A stretch of 63,445 bases of DNA, counting the filler, from Octopus bimaculoides (lineage: Eukaryota): assembly GCF_001194135.2 (NCBI RefSeq). It is 7 parts of 6 records of this genome, joined end to end, with 100 filler letters (N's around TTAATTAATTAA, not from the genome) between each part and the next. Parts side by side here need not be neighbours in the genome. Positions count along the whole stretch, not along the records: positions 57,777 to 61,204 come from NC_068985.1; 6 more parts are not named here. The stretch is one strand, 5' to 3'. A model generated the notes under the pieces. The model saw nothing but the letters and a program-made list of their open reading frames with translations, was not told the origin of the DNA and did no database searches. The translations under genes and the position numbers were made by a program. Every line of letters starts with the position of its first letter. Position 1 is the first letter of the stretch. Below are positions 9,591 through 61,304 of this stretch, one piece after another.

Positions 9591-10102
9591 CTGAATTTAT
9601 AGTTTACGTATTAATCAACAGCCTTGTCGATATATTAATCCTGTTACTCAATGGTTTGTGAATTAAACAACAATATTATTGAAGACTTTCATTAAGCGTG
9701 TTCACAATAAATTTTTGTCACTGTTCGAACTTTAAGAAAACCATTCAAACAAAATTTCACGTAAATCAAAATTACACAAGTGCAGTTGAATAAATACAAT
9801 TTATATAGCAACATGTGACATATTGCTTATTTCACTCTGTGATATTGCATAAATTGTATATTAAATCAAAAATAAATTATTTAAAATTTTATCATTACAA
9901 AGATCGAGTAAAAAATAGATAAAATAGGTAAATAAAGATTGTAATAGCATTGGAATTCCACTTCCTTTTTGCCGTCAAATGTTTTTGAAAAGGTATGAAG
10001 CAACCCCACTTTCACTCCTTAAAGTAATAATCCATACTACTGCAGTTTTAAAAGAGGACAATATTGTTTTTCATGTTCAGCGCCGTAAAACAAGACTTAA
10101 TT

Positions 10103-10513
<411 letters not shown>

Positions 10514-10519
10514 ATAATA

Positions 10520-12700
10520 TAGATGAGACGGTTATTCTCCGTTTAGAATACACTTCGTAGGGCTCAAGAAATTTAAATTTGAGCATAAAACTATAACCTG
10601 AGTATTTCATTCGAAATTGACATTAAAGTGGCCAATTTCTTAGACGCTACTTTCGACTTCCACACAAATCTATATCACCCTTTCCATAAACCCAACCAAT
10701 CTTTACAATATATACATGCTCTTTCTAATCACCCTAAACTTACCCCACAATAGCGTAGTTACAGGTATATCTATCAGAATCTCTAACTTATCTGCTAACG
10801 AAGAAATTTTTAATACTCACGCACCTTATTATAACCAGGCCCTCCAAATAAGTGGCTTCCGCGAAAAAAATCTATCATATCCCCAATACCAAAATAGCAC
10901 GTCTCTTTCCCAATACTAACTTCGAATCTACGAACACTACTTTCACTCTGCACCATTCCAACAACTCTAAAAAAAAACCCCTACATATCGCACTCGGCCG
11001 CCCCACTGGCCACCCCGAGCCTATAACAATTACAATCCCCCCTCCTGATCAACTCACTTCAACCACACACTCTAAATATTCTAAGGCCAGGAAGCGGGAA
11101 ATCCTATGGTTCGCACCACCTTTCTCTCTCCAAGTTAAATCTCTACCTAAATTCTTCTTTAAAATCCTAAAATTTAATTTTCCCCCACAGTATAAATACT
11201 ATCCCAACTTTAACAAATCATCCATGAAAAATCCAGCACACCTAATTTAAGATCCCTAATCGCCTCTTCGAACAAACTCAAACTTCAACACCAGTCCTTG
11301 GAACACCTAAACTCTCACACTGCACCTCGAATTATCTCACATAGTAGCAATGATACAACCCTTAGTAACCCCACTCAAATAATATCAAACTCAAACCATC
11401 ATCACACAATCCTACCTACGCTACAACGAATACTAGCTGCGATACCACCTCCCAATCCAATTCAAATACAGATTGCTCTTCAGGTTCTCCCCACTAACAA
11501 TGGACCAATGGAGCTCAAACTCACTAGCAGTAAACTCCAACCACGGAACAGATAGAAAAGCTTGCAATTGTCGGGTTTTTCAACTATGCTGTCTTGGAGG
11601 CTCCTGTCTACGTAAAAATATACTCTACAAGTGCCGTATAATAACACCACGCTCCCACCAAGAAAGGGTATATATCGGTGGCACCATAGATTTCAAGCGT
11701 CGCTACCGTGCACACATGAACTCTTTCTCCAATCCAAATTCTAAATTATCAACCTCCTTAGCAACGTATATATATACAACCTTAAAACCTCAAAATATTC
11801 CATACTCACTATCTTGGTCCATAGTAAGCGAAACTTCCCCATACAATGTAAACATCGGCGAGTATAAGTTATATCTAAAAGAATCATTAACCATTCTTCG
11901 TCTTCATAACTTCTCATTACTTAATAGATTCTCTGATGTTATTTATTTTAGTAAATACAAGTACTACTCATCTTTCACACACTTTGCTAAATATATATGA
12001 CCTTAAACTAAGACAAAGTTAGCCTAGCAACCTACTACTTAAAAAATACTACACTGCTCTTATTCTTTCTCATATACACATTTCCAATTTTTTCCAAATT
12101 CTTCAAATTCAATACTTCCCACTTCCCTCTTAGCCTCCCCACCCTCACCACTTTCAAAAAGTACTTAACACTACCCCACCCCTTTGAAAACTAACCAATC
12201 TATCTCTACCCCTTCCTATTCGCACCCCTCTATTCAATTTCATACACTTCTTTTTACCATAACACCCTCCTCAAATACCAACCCACTAACAACTACTATT
12301 CTGACACCTTCTCATTCCCCACTCTACACCCCCTCCATCTTCTCTCATTCCTCTCTAAATACCTTACTAATATCCCTCAGTCACTGAACCAGTCAACTTA
12401 TTTCCTTCAAATAATGGCCATTCCCATTTTCACTATCTCAACTTTTAACTCTATACAAACTAACACAAAGGTTACCATTCACATGCTACCTAAACTACCC
12501 TCTCTCTTCCCCCCATCTTCCACCTCTACCACTATCACTAGCTTTATTAATAACCCCTAACCCTGAAATTTTTCTCCTCCCACTATTCCCTATCTAAATA
12601 CCCGATGATGAAGTAAATTTACAATCATTATTTTGGACCACCAATCCTCCAGAAACAGCTGTTGGACATGTAAAACTCTTATTCAGCTCCTTTGATTCCT
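10520..12700 (+). mobile_element. Penelope-like element (Neptune-type), 5'-truncated: RT C-terminus, Cys-rich linker, GIY-YIG endonuclease, 3' end
   Basis: NFLDATFD..YHPFHKPN..YIH..SNHP and ISIRISNLSANEEIFN..APYYNQAL (RT thumb). ORF 11473-12000 reads CNCR...CCLGGSCL..NILYKC...VYIGGTIDFKRRYRAHMNSF (GIY-YIG). Confidence 0.9.
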
Positions 12701-15289: not shown

Positions 15290-16130
15290 AAATACAGCGA
15301 CCTACTTATCTCTAATTCTATTGAAAAGTGAAATACATTGTCTCAGGTTATCATGTCCTGAACACTCTTATTGCCTCACTGCTGCGCTTCCAGTATGAAC
15401 CATTTTCAGTAAACTGGTTCGTGATTTCTGTAATTTTAGTGAAGCTGCTACTGAAGAATTTTGTAAGAAGAAGGTGTTACTGTGCTAAAATTGAATATTT
15501 GGTTTCATGTTTGATGATTTACCGGACTAACTCCTGCAAATCTTCAGTAGACAAATTCTTAATACGAAGCTCTGTTAACTTCTTCAAGTCTTCCACATCA
15601 ACGTTTTGCCCTCTCCCTTTACCGGCCAACTCAACGATATCATTGTTGGTTATTGGTACTTTTACATCATAAAATTCCAGGGTGTTATTGCAGGTTATTG
15701 GCTATAGCTTCTTCCAGACTCTTTTCATGCAGTGTTCAATTACTTTGCCACATGCTGCTTTGTCTACGAACTTAATGATATGGTAGTTTTCTCAAAAGTT
15801 CCTAACAGATTGTTTATCTTGGCCATCTATTTCGTCAACAAGTTACTTGATGGTGCAATGATGACCTTGATATTATTGAAGATCTCTAAAGCATTACTAT
15901 TAATCAATGTGTTAAATGGTCTTGTTCGTCCTCGAGCATTCTGCAATGAGGTTAGCATGGCAGAAGCTTATATTTTGTCCGCATTTTTAAAGAAGGTTTT
16001 AATCGTCGGTGTAACCAAACATAAAACTTGCCTATACACGCCAGAATACCACAAATTCAGATCACCTCAACACTTGCAATATTATATCAATGTGATGCTT
16101 TTCCTTTAAATAAACTTTCCTCACTTGGTG
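15290..16130 (-). mobile_element. Tigger/pogo-like transposase remnant
   Basis: The minus strand gives an N-terminal HTH-like segment (FKNADKI.ASA) and a C-terminal DIVELAGKGEG..DVEDL acidic stretch typical of Tigger. Disrupted. Confidence 0.55.
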
Positions 16131-16330
16131 TTGTAGGCTGTTTTCATTCATGATAGATAAAGAATCTATTTTATCTTTTTACATATCTGAAAATATTTTG
16201 CACAATACATTTTGTTCTTAATTTACATTTAAACAACATTCCCCACGGAACGAAATGACTGGAGACCAGAAGTAGCAAGAGAAAGAATGAAGCAATACAG
16301 GCTTGAGAGGAGAAATACAAAAACAGACAT

Positions 16331-16394
<64 letters not shown>

Positions 16395-16515
16395 NNNNNN
16401 NNNNNNNNNNNNNNNNNNNNNNNNNNNNNNNNNNNNNNNNNNNNNNNNNNNNNNNNNNNNNNNNNNNNNNNNNNNNNNNNNNNNNNNNNNNNNNNNNNNN
16501 NNNNNNNNNNNNNNN

Positions 16516-16558
<43 letters not shown>

Positions 16559-17299
16559 ATGGACGAACAGCAGTTGCTTAATTTGGGAAATGTCTCTGCA
16601 AGAGTTAGAGAACATTTGATACTCCTATGATGTGATGTAAGAACCAAGACACTTTTTATCTTTTCAAATTAAAAATAATAAAAAGTAAGAAAATGAAAAT
16701 ATTTATATAAATATAAAAGGTGGAATTTTCAAGGTTCACGCTATTTATTCTAATAATGTAAGGTTATTTCATGGTATATCCTATTTTCAAGAAAAACAAT
16801 GGATGAATAACAAAATGAGGTGGAATTTAAATATGGGAAGGGGAAGGACATAAATATATACGAAGAGTCACACAAATGAAAGTGCCCATGTCTAGACGCA
16901 CTTGAGAGTGTATTTGTAAGCATAAGAGATAATTTTATTAATTTTGTTTTGTTACTGTTCATATAATCTTATACTTATATTGACACATGTATATGTATGT
17001 GTATGTATACTTACGTGTGACCTTGTAATTGTTTTTATAATTTATGCGAAAAATAACCCAGAAAATTATCACTTTAACTGGTTTATATAAATGTGTTCCT
17101 CCTAATTTAAAGCTTTTATCCCTTGAGTCCCACAGTAAATTCTTCCGATTAGTAAAAATATATATTACACTCATGTCTTGAGTTCTATTTTCCTGTTTGT
17201 GCCACCAATCCCATACGCGCACGCGTGTATAAAATATACATATGTATGTATATATACTTGAATATCGAAGGTAGAGTAATGTGTTTTTATTAAAGCCGA

Positions 17300-57600: not shown

Positions 57601-59498
57601 GTCTATTTCTTTAATTTTATAGTAGAAAGTCAGGTATACAATCTAAAGATGTATAACCCACTTTCTACTAAATATCNNNNNNNNNNNNNNNNNNNNNNNN
57701 NNNNNNNNNNNNNNNNNNNNTTAATTAATTAANNNNNNNNNNNNNNNNNNNNNNNNNNNNNNNNNNNNNNNNNNNNGGCACTTATTCCATGGATATCTTT
57801 TATTGAACCCTTAACTTATTGCGATGTAAACAAACTAATACCGATTGTCAAATGGTGATTGGGGGCAAACATAAATACACATTCATAGATATATACATAC
57901 ATGGTTAACGTGTCGTTTAGTCATAATAAAGTGAAAGTAAATTGTCCGGAAAAAAAAAAAAAAGAAATTGCGATACACTGCAAAAGTAACGACGACATAT
58001 CTGATAGAGGGGCTTCAAATGTAGGGGTTTCATCTACTTCTATACTCATGAAATTGTTAACCATTCACTCAAACTACGACAACATCCATACACAGACTGT
58101 AGATGGGCGATGGTTGTTCACCATGAAAAAACTAAGGCGGAATGTGAGACTAGTGATTTATTTACTATCATCATCATGTGTGACGATACGAATTTAGAAA
58201 TCGGGAAAAACCATTTACGAATCTCATTTCATGTATCAATAACTATTGTTTTTCCATAAATGTAAATATTTTCATCTTATAGAAAATATATCTACGGTTT
58301 TCATGTTATATGAAATATATATATGCAAGTCCTAGATATTCGTTATGTCTGTGGTGACTTGTACACAGGGCAAAACTAAAACTGATGGGGACAACATTTT
58401 GTCCCAGGATTTAATACTAAATTAGGGGTGCGACTTATATACGAGTAAATACCAATATATATATATATATATATACTAGACTAGACTACCTGTGACCCAT
58501 TGGGTCACTGGGTAAGTGAGTTTCCCAGCAACAGAGTTCTGTTTCGCGCTTTTTTTTTTTGCACGCGCAACAATTTTTACAGCTTATCCGAATGAACAGA
58601 GAAAGTACACAGAAATATATTTTACGTACCTGTCGTATACGTCGGTTTTGTTTTTTCGTTTTAAAGGTAAACGATTCTGATAGAAGCAATTAGATTTGGT
58701 GGTGGGGGAAGGGGAGGAATTAAAGATGTTGAAAACGTGGTCTTTTGCATATTCGGAATCTCCGTCATNNNNNNNNNNNNNNNNNNNNNNNNNNNNNNNN
58801 NNNNNNNNNNNNNNNNNNNNNNNNNNNNNNNNNNNNNNNNNNNNNNNNNNNNNNNNNNNNNNNNNNNNNNNNNNNNNNNNNNNNNNNNNNNNNNNNNNNN
58901 NNNNNNNNNNNNNNNNNNNNNNNNNNNNNNNNNNNNNNNNNNNNNNNNNNNNNNNNNNNNNNNNNNNNNNNNNNNNNNNNNNNNNNNNNNNNNNNNNNNN
59001 NNNNNNNNNNNNNNNNNNNNNNNNNNNNNNNNNNNNNNNNNNNNNNNNNNNNNNNNNNNNNNNNNNNNNNNNNNNNNNNNNNNNNNNNNNNNNNNNNNNN
59101 NNNNNNNNNNNNNNNNNNNNNNNNNNNNNNNNNNNNNNNNNNNNNNNNNNNNNNNNNNNNNNGGGGGGGGGTTCAGATTACATATAGTCCGTCTCTGCCC
59201 AAAAATGAATGTAACAGAATTATATTGCAAATATATTTAATCTACCGTGTAGATGTTTTAGCACCAACGTATAATCCAATGATATTCAGAATACATTAAA
59301 CTAGCACAAACAATAAAATTTAAATAAGTTGGATAGCAAATCTAATTAACAAATGTATTGTGGTTCAGTTTCCAATTAACCAAATATTTTGTTGAATGGG
59401 TCCAATAATAAAATATTAATATATGATATATATTATTAAGTGTTCCGACTCGTAAAATACTTCAACATTAAAAACATCAGTAACACGGACCATTGTGG

Positions 59499-60347
59499 TT
59501 ACTGCTTCTTTTCTTCTTTATGCGCTTTGAAACGTAATTCTTTGGTCATAGTCGAACTTACAGAGGCAAGTTGTCCAGAATGGTTATTCTGATTATGTAT
59601 GTTGCTAAGCTGGACATTGAGTTGAGTCATAAGTTGATGTAGTTCAATTTTTAGACCATATTCTTTCAACACCGAACATAGCGTTTGAATAAAACAAGAT
59701 CTGTCCTTTGTACGAGACTCCGAACAAAACCCGGAAGAAACAATCAACAGATTTGCCCATAACGGAATCCTCGTATAATTAATCGATTTCTCTTTAGACG
59801 GGAATAATCCATCATGTTGGACGTTAACTTTTACAACAGGACTAGTATCAACGATGAAGAATTTTGGTTTTGCAGCGAGAGTCGAATTTTCTTTTTTAAT
59901 TAGTTCATTCAACAGAGAATCAAAACTGACGAAATCATCCGTGCCGTATATGTGGTCATCGTTTTCGCTATAAGTTAATATTGCGCATACAAAACAGCTA
60001 TAATCATTACTACGCGTCGACAGACTACTTATTAGATCTTTCATCTCTGCTACACTTTGATCCTTACGGAAAATAACTGTAAAGTTTAAATACGTCAGAG
60101 CTTCTTTCAGGTCTTCCGCATCTCTTTGAGAATTCCTTCGTGGAGCTATAGTTTGAGAATATAAACAGTTGTAGACAATAAGAGCCAGGCCAGGTTTGGT
60201 GGAGTTAGTGCCACACTCTACTGTAAAATGGTACTTTGAGTAATTTTTACTGAACTGCTCCGCGGAATTACTGGTAGAACCTTCTTGTGGAAAGTTAGAA
60301 CATTTCTTATGGATCCCATCGGTTGGATTCGAATCACTGTAATCCAT
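59499..60347 (-). CDS. Intronless caspase-3/7-like protein, predicted catalytically inactive (282 aa)
   Basis: Uninterrupted ORF with caspase p20 and p10 blocks: GLALIVYN, RRNSQRDAEDL..L..LNF, CFVCAILTYS, L..KPKFFIVDTS, IPLWANLLIVSS, SCFIQTLCSVL..YG..ELHQLMT, SSTMTKELRF. SHG is replaced by TYS and QACRG by DTSPV. Confidence 0.88.
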   Translation of the reverse strand: MDYSDSNPTDGIHKKCSNFPQEGSTSNSAEQFSKNYSKYHFTVECGTNSTKPGLALIVYNCLYSQTIAPRRNSQRDAEDLKEALTYLNFTVIFRKDQSVAEMKDLISSLSTRSNDYSCFVCAILTYSENDDHIYGTDDFVSFDSLLNELIKKENSTLAAKPKFFIVDTSPVVKVNVQHDGLFPSKEKSINYTRIPLWANLLIVSSGFCSESRTKDRSCFIQTLCSVLKEYGLKIELHQLMTQLNVQLSNIHNQNNHSGQLASVSSTMTKELRFKAHKEEKKQ

Positions 60348-60819
60348 AATTAGAATAACGTGCTTTATATTCAGACAAAATGTAGACGATGAAAAAAATG
60401 TAATATTATATAAAGTTAGAAATCAAATATTGCTAAAAAAAATAAGTTTGAGCATTAATAGCAGAATAAAACATACGGCACCTATTTACTACTAAATAGG
60501 TTTAATAAGGTGAGCGAGACACATGCTGAATAAGTGACGTTTGATTTCAAACTGAACTTGTTTCACAATTATAGTTCTCAACGTCACATCCGTTTGACTA
60601 TGTATGTATGCATTTATTTATATGTATAACGTAGAACAATCGGTTATTCTTGGTTGTTGATTAAACTCAGTCTGGTTGTGTTGTTTAGTAATTTATTACT
60701 TAGCTAGTTGTACGGTATTCTTCCATCTCACTCGCTATCCTTCGGAGCAACGCCTTTTCAATTTTGTCTGCTGGTGCCATAAGAAATGTTTCGGTATTAT
60801 TTGATTCTTTGTTGTTGGC

Positions 60820-61125
60820 ACTACGACGTCGAGGTTTCCAGTTGATCCAATCAACGGAACAGCCTGCTCGTGAAATTAATGTGCAAGTGGCTGAGCACTC
60901 CACAGACACGTGTACCCTTAACGTAGTTCTCGTGGATATTCAGCGTGACAAGGCTGGCCTTTAGAAATGCAGTACAACAGAAACAGGAAGTAAGAGAAAG
61001 TTGTGGTGGAAGAGTACAGCAGAATTCGCCACTATCCCCTGCCGGAGCCTCGTCTGGGAATCGAAACCGCGATCCTATGACGGCGAGTCCGCTGCCCTAA
61101 CCACTGGGCCATTGCGCCTCCACAT
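60820..61125. mobile_element. SINE fragments (tail block shared with 46560-46750, plus a minus-strand tRNA-like head)
   Basis: gcctgctcgtgaaattaa.gtgcaagtggctgagca.tccacagacac occurs at both sites. The minus-strand head reads ggcgcaatggcccagtggttagggcagcgg..ggtttcgattccc. Confidence 0.7.
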
Positions 61126-61304
61126 TTGATTCTTTCACCTGCACGATATTCACTAAGAGGTCAGGGTAGTTGATTCCACGCAAAAAATCCGAGTTTTATT
61201 ATTTNNNNNNNNNNNNNNNNNNNNNNNNNNNNNNNNNNNNNNNNNNNNTTAATTAATTAANNNNNNNNNNNNNNNNNNNNNNNNNNNNNNNNNNNNNNNN
61301 NNNN

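What the first reader, a model, noticed from the sequence alone, without database searches (positions are those of the whole stretch)
59499..60347. Intact, intronless pseudo-caspase lacking both catalytic residues
Seen: an unbroken 282-codon ORF in a window where every transposon ORF is shattered, which suggests selection. It aligns by eye to executioner caspases over p20 and p10. The catalytic His is Tyr126 (codon 59972-59970), the catalytic Cys is Ser169 (59843-59841), QACRG has become DTSPV, and the p10 SWR substrate-binding Arg is absent. Asp-Gly sites remain where prodomain and linker cleavage occur (NPTD/G at residue 10, VQHD/G at residue 179). Established: inactive caspase folds such as c-FLIP regulate active caspases by heterodimerisation. 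Inference: this could be a retroposed, lineage-specific caspase decoy or scaffold with no death-fold prodomain, possibly itself cleaved by active caspases.
Basis: partly seen in the sequence, partly recalled or inferred. Interest (0 to 1): 0.72.

Follow-up and report, generated by a model that had tools for sequence, protein, structure and literature searches.

The report
Conserved catalytically dead octopus caspase-3-like gene
This is a real, intact octopus gene for a caspase-shaped protein that has lost the residues needed to cut other proteins; three octopus species have kept it, so it probably regulates active caspases rather than acting as one, which is a known kind of protein and not a new one.

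Summary
Window 59499-60347 (-) is an unbroken 282-codon ORF that matches Pfam Peptidase_C14 (E=2.8e-29) and human caspase-7 (E~1e-20). It has Tyr126 at the catalytic His, Ser169 at the catalytic Cys, DTSPV for QACRG and SES for SWR. The window is Octopus bimaculoides chromosome CM046605.1 at ~55.42 Mb. A syntenic orthologue in O. sinensis (86% identity, named 'caspase-7' by NCBI) and a third octopod sequence (75%) keep the same dead residues, so they are not assembly errors. Selection is real but regional. Indels are about 10 times rarer in the CDS than in the flanks (P<=1.5e-5). The p10-like half has dN/dS 0.24-0.25 (p<=0.001). The p20-like half and the N-terminus are near neutral, and whole-gene dN/dS against O. 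sinensis is 1.3. The 'retroposed' reading is not supported: the nearest relatives, an expanded octopod caspase-3-like family with intact active sites, are all single-exon too. The linker site (V/I)QHD|G is invariant and aligns with the family's MHD|A and with caspase-7's IQAD|S. Best reading: a maintained pseudo-caspase that regulates or acts as a decoy for active paralogues. Expression and mechanism were not tested. It is a new member of a known kind, of moderate to low interest.

The parts
59499..60347 (-). Complete single-exon CDS of the pseudo-caspase (282 aa plus TAA stop at 59499-59501)
   Evidence: ORF; Pfam PF00656, 102.9 bits; same gene called in GCA_001194135.2 CM046605.1
60198..60347 (-). 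N-terminal region, residues 1-50. Short, predicted disordered, no death-fold domain. It starts with the octopod caspase-3-like family motif MDYxDxxx(D/E)GI and includes the invariant D10-G11 (60315-60320).
   Evidence: pLDDT <50 for most of residues 1-41; no CARD/DED hit; motif shared with active paralogues; dN/dS ~0.6-1.0
59814..60197 (-). p20-like (large-subunit) half, residues 51-178. The fold is kept, but amino-acid change is near neutral.
   Evidence: fold; dN/dS 0.77-0.87 deep comparison, 1.5 shallow; not different from 1; active paralogues 0.45-0.80
59970..59972 (-). Tyr126 (TAT) at the position of the catalytic His (SHG has become TYS)
   Evidence: identical in all three orthologues
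59835..59849 (-). DTSPV (residues 167-171) in place of the QACRG pentapeptide. Ser169 (AGT, 59841-59843) sits at the catalytic Cys and Asp167 at the S1-pocket Gln.
   Evidence: invariant in all three orthologues
59769..59813 (-). Intersubunit linker, residues 179-193. Predicted disordered and the most variable segment. The candidate processing site V176-Q-H-D179|G180 (59808-59822) sits at the p20-linker junction and overlaps this part at D179-G180; Q-H-D-G is invariant.
   Evidence: pLDDT 42-44; 5-8 of 15 residues differ per species pair while QHDG is invariant; aligns with caspase-7 IQAD|S, octopod MHD|A, Sepia SHD|A
59523..59768 (-). p10-like (small-subunit) half, residues 194-275, under clear purifying selection. 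It contains SES (59715-59723) in place of SWR, a 3-residue deletion in the preceding substrate loop, the fully conserved DRSCFIQTLCSVLKEY helix and the beta6 strand LASVSSTMTKELRF.
   Evidence: dN/dS 0.24-0.25, Fisher p=0.0004-0.001; 0.42 shallow; active paralogues 0.21-0.56; alignment

Best explanation
This is a functional, lineage-restricted pseudo-caspase of Octopus. It is a highly diverged, single-exon member of the octopod caspase-3-like gene expansion. It keeps the executioner-caspase fold but has lost the catalytic His-Cys dyad and two of the three residues that hold the substrate's Asp, so it cannot cut proteins. Shown here: it has existed as a one-to-one syntenic gene since before O. 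bimaculoides, O. sinensis and a third octopod diverged. Selection has kept its reading frame free of stops and frameshifts. Amino-acid constraint is concentrated in the small-subunit (p10-like) half, which in caspases carries the dimer-interface strand. The large-subunit half, freed from catalysis, drifts almost neutrally. Inferred: it works by protein-protein contact and not by catalysis. The most likely modes are two. It may pair through its p10-like half with an active caspase-3-like paralogue, forming a dimer with one or no working site. It may also present its conserved linker site (V/I)QHD|G as a competing pseudo-substrate to the protease that activates those paralogues. Either way it would tune executioner-caspase activity up or down, as c-FLIP(L) and the mosquito decoy CASPS18 do.
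For: Identity and dead site: Pfam PF00656 at 102.9 bits; caspase-7 E=1e-20 with SHG/TYS, QACRG/DTSPV and SWR/SES aligned; model and Foldseek matches to caspase-7/3/6. Conservation: orthologues at 86% and 75% identity keep LTYS and VDTSPV; synteny with O. sinensis holds on both flanks. Selection on the frame: 1 in-frame indel in 849 bp against 23 events in 1411 bp of flank, so 13.8 were expected and Poisson P=1.5e-5; against the third species P=9e-10. In neutral simulations the ORF stays stop-free with probability 0.15 (54 substitutions) and 0.017 (123 substitutions). Selection on the protein: amino-acid differences of 70 against a neutral expectation of 82+-4.6 (p~0.009) in the deep comparison; p10 dN/dS 0.24-0.25 with p=0.0004-0.001, as low as or lower than active paralogues at 0.21-0.56. 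Family context: the best hits are octopod caspase-3-like proteins with intact H/QACRG/SWR (142 bits, alignment from residue 1, shared MDYxDxxx(D/E)GI motif), located on the same chromosome. Linker site: QHDG is invariant in a linker where 5-8 of 15 residues differ per pair, and it aligns with known caspase processing sites. Precedent: FLIP(L) has His->Arg and Cys->Tyr, heterodimerises with caspase-8 and is cleaved at its linker Asp376 (PMC7586951). Enzymatically inactive caspase paralogues act as decoys in Diptera (Bryant et al. 2010, as cited in PMC3141678).
Against: There is no evidence of transcription or translation. The only non-genome contig (L002, Logan SRR11869391) is colinear with genomic DNA upstream and cannot be called a transcript. 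Whole-gene dN/dS against O. sinensis is 1.29, and amino-acid differences there (40) equal the neutral expectation (37.9+-3.1). p20 and N-terminal dN/dS cannot be told apart from 1. No O. vulgaris orthologue appears in the protein database, although its sister species O. sinensis has one; it may be unannotated or lost. The region partition for dN/dS follows the standard caspase architecture, but 12 tests were run; p=0.0004 survives Bonferroni correction and p=0.001 also does. Dimerisation, cleavage and any effect on caspase activity are untested. The tree does not resolve the parent gene (bootstrap 14-16%).
Confidence: 0.55

Rival explanations
1. It is a slowly decaying unprocessed pseudogene. 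A duplicate of an active caspase-3-like gene lost its active site and is drifting, and the open frame has survived by luck.
For: Whole-gene dN/dS is 1.29 against O. sinensis, and amino-acid change there equals the neutral expectation. CDS nucleotide identity (93.6%) is about the same as flank identity (90-96%). p20 and N-terminal dN/dS are near 1. There is no expression evidence. No orthologue is annotated in O. vulgaris. The chance of no stop over the shallow branch alone is 0.15.
Against: The indel deficit cannot be luck: 1 in-frame event against ~14 expected, P=1.5e-5, and ~24 expected against the third species, P=9e-10. P(no stop) is 0.017 over the deep comparison. p10 dN/dS is 0.24-0.25, p<=0.001, as constrained as in active paralogues. 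All three species keep a full-length frame with the same start, and two of the three end at the same stop. The dead-site residues themselves are invariant.
Confidence: 0.1
2. It is a neofunctionalised caspase-fold protein whose role has nothing to do with regulating caspases, for example a scaffold or binding protein for other partners. The conserved p10 surface would then serve a new interaction.
For: The protein is only about 34% identical to its nearest active relatives and sits on a very long branch. It lies alone about 42 Mb from the active tandem genes. The substrate groove is dismantled, with a 3-residue loop deletion and S1 residues lost. Constraint falls on helices and strands of p10, not on any caspase-specific motif. 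The C. elegans precedent for an anti-apoptotic dead caspase (CSP-3) was not reproduced in an independent study (PMC3591282), a reminder that 'decoy' roles are easily assumed.
Against: The most conserved stretches (FIQTLCSVLKEYG, TMTKELRF) are the ones conserved across all executioner caspases, including the dimer-interface beta6 strand. The linker processing Asp is kept invariant and in register with the family's site, which is hard to explain without a link to caspase processing.
Confidence: 0.2
3. It is a recent retroposed (processed) copy of a multi-exon host caspase-3/7 gene that became a decoy.
For: The CDS is uninterrupted and the gene lies alone, far from its paralogues.
Against: Every related octopod caspase-3-like gene examined is also single-exon, including those with intact active sites: Argonauta P0012 777 bp, O. 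vulgaris P0165 861 bp, the O. bimaculoides P0174 tandem pair 867 and 870 bp, and O. sinensis P0178 852 bp. No A-rich tract or AATAAA follows the stop (the nearest ATTAAA is 258 nt downstream), and no flanking direct repeats were seen around the gene. The gene predates the split of three species (dS up to 0.24), so it is not recent.
Confidence: 0.1
4. It is still a protease that uses alternative residues, for example Ser169 as the nucleophile.
For: Ser occupies the exact Cys position and is invariant.
Against: The general-base His is Tyr. The oxyanion and S1 residues Gln and Arg are Asp and Ser. The L3 substrate loop has a deletion. No caspase-fold enzyme with a Tyr/Ser dyad is known to me (own knowledge).
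Confidence: 0.03

Closest known systems
Octopod caspase-3-like expansion (e.g. O. bimaculoides P0174/P0182, O. sinensis P0169-P0183, O. vulgaris P0165-P0176, Argonauta hians 'caspase-7-like' P0186)
   Same: Best sequence matches (124-142 bits, 31-34% identity, aligned from residue 1). Same length (~283-289 aa) and same single-exon structure. Shared N-terminal MDYxDxxx(D/E)GI motif and an xHD|(A/G) linker site. Members lie on the same chromosome in both O. bimaculoides and O. sinensis.
   Different: Those genes keep His, QACRG and, in most cases, SWR, and they form a well-supported core clade that excludes the dead trio (94%). The dead gene has Tyr/Ser, DTSPV, SES and a 3-residue loop deletion, and sits alone about 42 Mb from the tandem pair.
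c-FLIP(L) (CFLAR), the vertebrate pseudo-caspase
   Same: A caspase-like domain with both dyad residues replaced, and the replacements conserved across species. It has a linker Asp that an active caspase cleaves, and it acts by heterodimerising with the active paralogue (PMC7586951).
   Different: FLIP(L) derives from initiator caspase-8/10 and has tandem DEDs for recruitment to the DISC; its substitutions are Arg/Tyr. The octopus protein is executioner-type, has no death-fold domain and has Tyr/Ser. Executioner caspases are constitutive dimers, so the pairing logic would differ (own knowledge).
Dipteran caspase-like decoys (Aedes aegypti CASPS18, which enhances its paralogue CASPS19; Bryant et al. 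2010)
   Same: A short-prodomain, effector-type caspase paralogue that arose by gene duplication, is enzymatically inactive and modulates an active paralogue (as summarised in PMC3141678). This is the nearest functional analogy.
   Different: It is an independent origin in insects with no specific sequence relationship. I could not read the primary paper, so its details rest on the citing paper and my own knowledge.
C. elegans CSP-3 (and CSP-2)
   Same: A caspase homologue lacking an active site, reported to restrain CED-3. By my own knowledge CSP-3 is essentially a small-subunit-only protein, which echoes the p10-focused constraint found here.
   Different: CSP-3 lacks the large subunit altogether. 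Its anti-apoptotic phenotype was not reproduced by Denning et al. (PMC3591282).
Dead or variant caspases already noted in other molluscs (oyster Cg3A with His->Tyr, the Cg3/7-like group with diverse p20 sites, mussel Mg2-like lacking His and Cys)
   Same: These are lineage-specific expansions of executioner-like caspases in molluscs that repeatedly produce members without catalytic residues, including the same His->Tyr change (PMC7836458).
   Different: They are from different classes (bivalves) and are not orthologous. Many of the oyster proteins lack p10, whereas here p10 is the best-conserved part. None has been functionally characterised as a decoy.

Membership tests
Caspase domain family (MEROPS C14A / Pfam Peptidase_C14), membership by homology and fold | Significant match to the Peptidase_C14 profile across p20 and p10 | tested here: met
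   PF00656 E=2.8e-29, 102.9 bits against a cutoff of 21.4, profile positions 2-232 of 233
Caspase domain family (MEROPS C14A / Pfam Peptidase_C14), membership by homology and fold | Caspase alpha/beta fold | tested here: met
   AF2 model pLDDT 78.6 with a confident core; Foldseek top hits caspase-7/3/6, E~1e-18, target-normalised TM 0.73-0.89
Active caspase (enzyme) | Catalytic His-Cys dyad | tested here: not met
   Tyr126 and Ser169 at the aligned positions, invariant in three orthologues
Active caspase (enzyme) | QACxG pentapeptide and the S1 pocket Arg/Gln/Arg | tested here: not met
   DTSPV replaces QACRG. R70 is kept, Gln has become Asp167 and the SWR Arg has become Ser211. A 3-residue deletion lies in the preceding loop.
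Pseudo-caspase of the c-FLIP(L) type | Caspase-like domain with dyad substitutions conserved across species | tested here: met
   LTYS and VDTSPV are identical in O. bimaculoides, O. sinensis and the third octopod
Pseudo-caspase of the c-FLIP(L) type | Tandem death-effector domains at the N-terminus | tested here: not met
   No DED or CARD hit in Pfam even at E<=10; residues 1-45 are predicted disordered
Pseudo-caspase of the c-FLIP(L) type | Heterodimerises with, and is cleaved in its linker by, the active paralogue | not testable with these tools
   Only indirect evidence: invariant QHD|G in register with caspase processing sites, and a constrained p10/beta6
Effector-type caspase decoy (Aedes CASPS18-like) | Short prodomain, inactive, derived by duplication from an active effector caspase family in the same genome | tested here: inconclusive
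   The short disordered N-terminus and dead site are met. The nearest relatives are active octopod caspase-3-like genes on the same chromosome, but the tree does not resolve the sister gene (14-16% bootstrap).
Effector-type caspase decoy (Aedes CASPS18-like) | Changes the activity of the active paralogue | not testable with these tools
   Needs biochemistry
Processed retrogene | Lacks introns that the parent gene has | tested here: not met
   All related active genes examined are single-exon
Processed retrogene | Poly(A) remnant and target-site duplications flanking the copy | tested here: not met
   No A-run of 8 or more near the 3' end and no AATAAA. The gene's age could have erased them, so this is weak.
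Non-functional pseudogene | Frame disruptions, or neutral evolution throughout | tested here: not met
   The frame is intact in three species; indel deficit P<=1.5e-5; p10 dN/dS 0.24-0.25. The p20 half alone would pass as neutral.

The most novel reading that the evidence does not exclude
The octopod-specific, fast-evolving, intronless caspase-3-like expansion has its own dedicated regulator. This regulator would be a cleavable dead caspase whose only constrained part is the small-subunit half. It would act like a full-length version of a small-subunit-only inhibitor, capping or poisoning executioner dimers after being processed at (V/I)QHD|G. That would be an executioner-level analogue of c-FLIP, evolved independently in cephalopods, possibly tied to immune or antiviral control of cell death.
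Probability: 0.25. Interest if true: 0.5.

Novelty: new member of a known kind. Interest (0 to 1): 0.3.

Why it matters
Catalytically dead caspase paralogues are a recurring way of regulating cell death; examples are c-FLIP in vertebrates, decoy caspases in mosquitoes and candidates in oysters. Very few have been studied outside model organisms. This gene is a clean case for study: it has one-to-one syntenic orthologues, a fully dead site, a retained processing site, and constraint confined to the dimer-forming half. It sits within a cephalopod-specific expansion of intronless executioner-like caspases that has hardly been described. It also matters for annotation, because the O. sinensis orthologue is named 'caspase-7' although it cannot be a protease. 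If the decoy role were shown, it would be an independent invention of executioner-level pseudo-caspase control. That would interest cell-death and pseudoenzyme researchers but would not change the field.

Tried and rejected
1. The top hit of the exhaustive search, P0007 (E=1e-42), is not a close relative. It is a cricket protein with three tandem caspase domains whose scores add up.

2. I tested whether shared dead-site motifs mark deeper relatives. The candidates were Argonauta P0062/P0047 (xTSPx pentapeptide), Logan P0070 (LTY / VD / SES) and P0013 (LSY / QADPQ). Reciprocal BLAST ranks (63rd-131st) and bootstraps (<=20%) give no support, so I treat the motifs as convergent or unresolvable.

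3. I tested synteny between the Octopus locus and the Argonauta dead-caspase loci. Only short, repeat-like tblastn matches appeared.

4. I tried to use the Logan contig L002 as evidence of expression. It is colinear with both Octopus genomes to about 250 nt upstream of the ATG, and the break falls in a microsatellite, so it is probably genomic. A literature search for the run accessions found nothing relevant.

5. It had to be replaced by indel and stop simulations and a per-region analysis.

6. tRNA and Rfam scans of the piece found nothing significant. The single mir-4680 match (23.9 bits against a gathering score of 78) is chance.

7. The NJ trees could not place the trio. No maximum-likelihood software was available.

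8. The primary Aedes decoy paper (PMC2902568) is not held in the library.
Full report
**What is there**

Window 59499-60347 (minus strand) is one uninterrupted ORF of 282 codons, from ATG to TAA.
- The protein matches Pfam Peptidase_C14 at 102.9 bits (cutoff 21.4, E=2.8e-29) over essentially the whole profile.
- Its best solved relatives are human caspase-7 (E~1e-20), followed by caspase-3.
- In the HMMER alignment, caspase-7's SHG lies over TYS, QACRG over DTSPV and SWR over SES. The first S1-pocket arginine is retained as R70.
- An AlphaFold2 model built on a 67-sequence alignment has pLDDT 78.6, with the core mostly above 90. Residues 1-45 and the linker 174-192 are disordered.
- Foldseek returns caspase-7/3/6 structures at E~1e-18, with target-normalised TM up to 0.89.
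- No CARD or DED is present.

**Where it comes from**

The same protein is called on Octopus bimaculoides assembly GCA_001194135.2, chromosome CM046605.1, inside the fetched range 55,413,385-55,434,233. No other gene is called within 10 kb on either side.

Two orthologues exist.
- An O. sinensis protein of 283 aa is 86% identical. NCBI names it 'caspase-7'. It is a single exon on CM016863.1 at ~72.37 Mb.
- A 279-aa protein from a Logan assembly of SRR11869391 is 75% identical; its species is unknown.

Both flanks of the window align with the O. sinensis locus, so the genes are syntenic orthologues. All three keep LTYS and VDTSPV. That rules out assembly error.

**Is it under selection?**

| Comparison | dN/dS | dS |
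|---|---|---|
| O. bimaculoides vs O. sinensis | 1.29 | 0.054 |
| O. bimaculoides vs third species | 0.64 | 0.231 |
| O. sinensis vs third species | 0.55 | 0.243 |

Nucleotide identity in the CDS (93.6%) is no higher than in the flanks (90-96%). Three other lines of evidence are clear.

1. *Indels.* The flanks carry 23 gap events in 1411 aligned bp. The 849-bp CDS carries one, and it is in frame. 13.8 were expected, giving Poisson P=1.5e-5. Against the third species, 24 were expected and 1 was seen, P=9e-10.
2. *Stop codons.* In neutral simulations using the observed number of substitutions and the observed transition share, the frame stays stop-free with probability 0.15 (shallow) and 0.017 (deep). 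In the deep comparison the amino-acid differences (70) are fewer than in stop-free neutral simulations (82+-4.6, p~0.009).
3. *Regional constraint.* I split the protein by the standard caspase architecture.

| Region (residues) | dN/dS, deep comparisons | dN/dS, shallow comparison |
|---|---|---|
| N-terminus (1-50) | 0.64-0.99 | not defined (dS = 0) |
| p20-like half (51-178) | 0.77-0.87 (not different from 1) | 1.53 |
| p10-like half (194-275) | 0.24-0.25 (Fisher p=0.0004-0.001) | 0.42 |

As a control, pairs of active octopus paralogues give p20 0.45-0.80 and p10 0.21-0.56. The dead gene's p10 is thus at least as constrained as in working caspases, while its p20 is more relaxed.

The dead gene's orthologue pair (86% identity) is also not faster-evolving than the best cross-species matches of the active paralogues (75-82%).

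Conclusion: the frame and the small-subunit half are maintained. The large-subunit half is drifting within the limits of the fold.

**Relatives and the 'retroposed' idea**

An exhaustive profile search of 1.84 billion representatives found nothing below E=1e-30 except the gene's own cluster and a three-domain cricket protein whose score is a sum.

A search seeded from an active octopod caspase uncovered the real context. There is an expansion of caspase-3-like genes of about 283-289 aa in O. bimaculoides, O. sinensis, O. vulgaris and Argonauta.
- These are the dead gene's best matches: up to 142 bits and 34% identity, with the alignment running from residue 1.
- They share its N-terminal motif MDYxDxxx(D/E)GI.
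- Several lie on the same chromosome. A tandem pair sits at 97.33 Mb in O. bimaculoides, about 42 Mb from the dead gene. One sits at 16.16 Mb in O. sinensis.
- All keep His and QACRG, and most keep SWR.

Every one of these genes that I examined is a single exon.

| Gene | Species | Coding length (bp) |
|---|---|---|
| P0012 (active) | Argonauta hians | 777 |
| P0165 (active) | O. vulgaris | 861 |
| P0174 and tandem neighbour (active) | O. bimaculoides | 867 and 870 |
| P0178 (active) | O. sinensis | 852 |
| P0062 (dead) | Argonauta hians | 768 |
| P0047 (dead) | Argonauta hians | 1086 |

Being intronless is therefore inherited from the family and says nothing special about this copy. No poly(A) remnant or flanking duplication surrounds the gene.

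NJ trees with bootstrap recover the dead trio at 100% and an active octopod core that excludes it at 94%. They cannot place the trio (14-20%).

**The dead site and the cleavage sites in family context**

- Beyond His->Tyr and QACRG->DTSPV, the dead gene has lost three residues (TVP) of the loop before the SWR position and has SES (SQS in the third species) there. The substrate groove is dismantled, not just the dyad.
- The linker site (V/I)QHD|G is invariant, although 5-8 of the 15 linker residues differ between species. It aligns with MHD|A in the active octopod genes, SHD|A in Sepia, and the linker Asp of IETD|S / IQAD|S in vertebrate caspase-3/7.
- The N-terminal D10-G11 is weaker evidence. 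It is part of the family motif, and many active paralogues have Glu there.

**How it most likely works**

*Shown:* it is a conserved, catalytically dead, executioner-type caspase fold. Its frame, linker Asp and small-subunit half are maintained.

*Inferred:* it acts through binding. In caspases the small subunit carries the beta6 strand and the helices that form the dimer interface (established knowledge). Here those are the most conserved parts: FIQTLCSVLKEYG and TMTKELRF. Two modes are the best-supported readings.
- It could pair with an active paralogue to make a crippled or altered dimer.
- It could compete as a pseudo-substrate for the activating protease at QHD|G.

Precedents:
- c-FLIP(L), with His->Arg and Cys->Tyr, heterodimerises with caspase-8 and is cleaved at Asp376 (PMC7586951).
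- Dipteran caspase-like decoys modulate active paralogues (Bryant 2010, via PMC3141678).
- The C. elegans CSP-3 precedent is contested (PMC3591282).
- Bivalve surveys already report executioner-like caspases without catalytic residues, including His->Tyr (PMC7836458).

The direction of the effect, inhibition or enhancement, cannot be predicted.

**What is missing**

No evidence of expression could be obtained. The Logan contig is colinear with the genome and is probably genomic DNA. No O. vulgaris orthologue is present in the protein database; this could mean it is unannotated or lost. The parent gene is unresolved.

**Verdict**

It is a new, uncharacterised member of a known kind (pseudo-caspase or caspase decoy), embedded in an octopod-specific intronless caspase-3-like expansion. 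Literature searches found no description of an octopus pseudo-caspase. Interest is moderate to low.

Noticed in passing
window 60811-61123 (minus strand), with direct repeats at 60799-60810 and 61124-61135: A 313-bp insertion lies about 460 bp upstream of the gene's ATG and is absent from the orthologous O. sinensis locus. Read on the gene's strand, it starts with a tRNA-like head (GGAGGCGCAATGGCCCAGTGGTTAGGG...GGTTTCGATTCC, with box A/B-like motifs). It is flanked by a perfect 12-bp target-site duplication (ATTTGATTCTTT on the + strand). It looks like a species-specific tRNA-derived SINE insertion. ARAGORN and Rfam do not call it a tRNA.
   Followed up: partly
L009 (O. bimaculoides CM046605.1:97,328,411-97,349,277), genes at 10001-10867 and 16035-16904; also L007, L010, L004: Octopods carry an expanded family of caspase-3-like genes with intact active sites, all single-exon, some in tandem about 5 kb apart. 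Best cross-species matches are only 75-82% identical, and dN/dS is high for enzymes (0.4-0.8 in p20). This looks like a fast-evolving, birth-and-death family. Whether the family as a whole began as a retrogene is open.
   Followed up: partly
L005 10001-10768 and L006 10001-11086 (Argonauta hians scaffolds BAAFZT010000015.1 and BAAFZT010000021.1): These are a second, apparently independent pair of dead intronless caspase-3-like genes (P0062, P0047; 62% identical to each other). They have Val at the His site, QTSPF/TTSPF at the pentapeptide and no SWR. The xTSPx motif resembles the query's DTSPV, but reciprocal similarity and trees do not support common descent.
   Followed up: yes
protein P0190 (O. 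sinensis 'caspase-3-like', 278 aa): This member of the active octopod family (59% identical to P0165) keeps His but reads QAALF instead of QACRG, and SWE instead of SWR. It is another candidate dead caspase that arose separately inside the expansion.
   Followed up: no
window 58770-59162: An assembly gap (a run of about 393 N) lies about 340 bp downstream of the gene's stop codon, preceded by a poly-C/G run. The gene's 3' flank and any 3' UTR end or poly(A) site may be incomplete in this assembly.
   Followed up: no
window 58560-58686 (piece positions 2519-2645 in gene orientation): This 127-bp segment matches the O. sinensis locus at 95% identity but in inverted orientation (L001 11902-11776), next to a directly oriented weaker match. 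It suggests a small inversion or an inverted-repeat element downstream of the gene.
   Followed up: no
proteins P0013 (Logan, 283 aa), P0070 (L003, Logan ERR6338309, 267 aa), P0032 (Bulinus), P0040 (Haliotis), P0068 (Dimorphilus): Among 199 caspase-domain matches in the proteins fetched up to (mainly the 150 best representatives), only 128 keep both His and Cys. His->Tyr recurs in many unrelated lophotrochozoan executioner-like caspases, several of which retain Cys (LSYG...QACPx). Loss of the caspase His to Tyr seems to be a common and possibly non-random route.
   Followed up: partly
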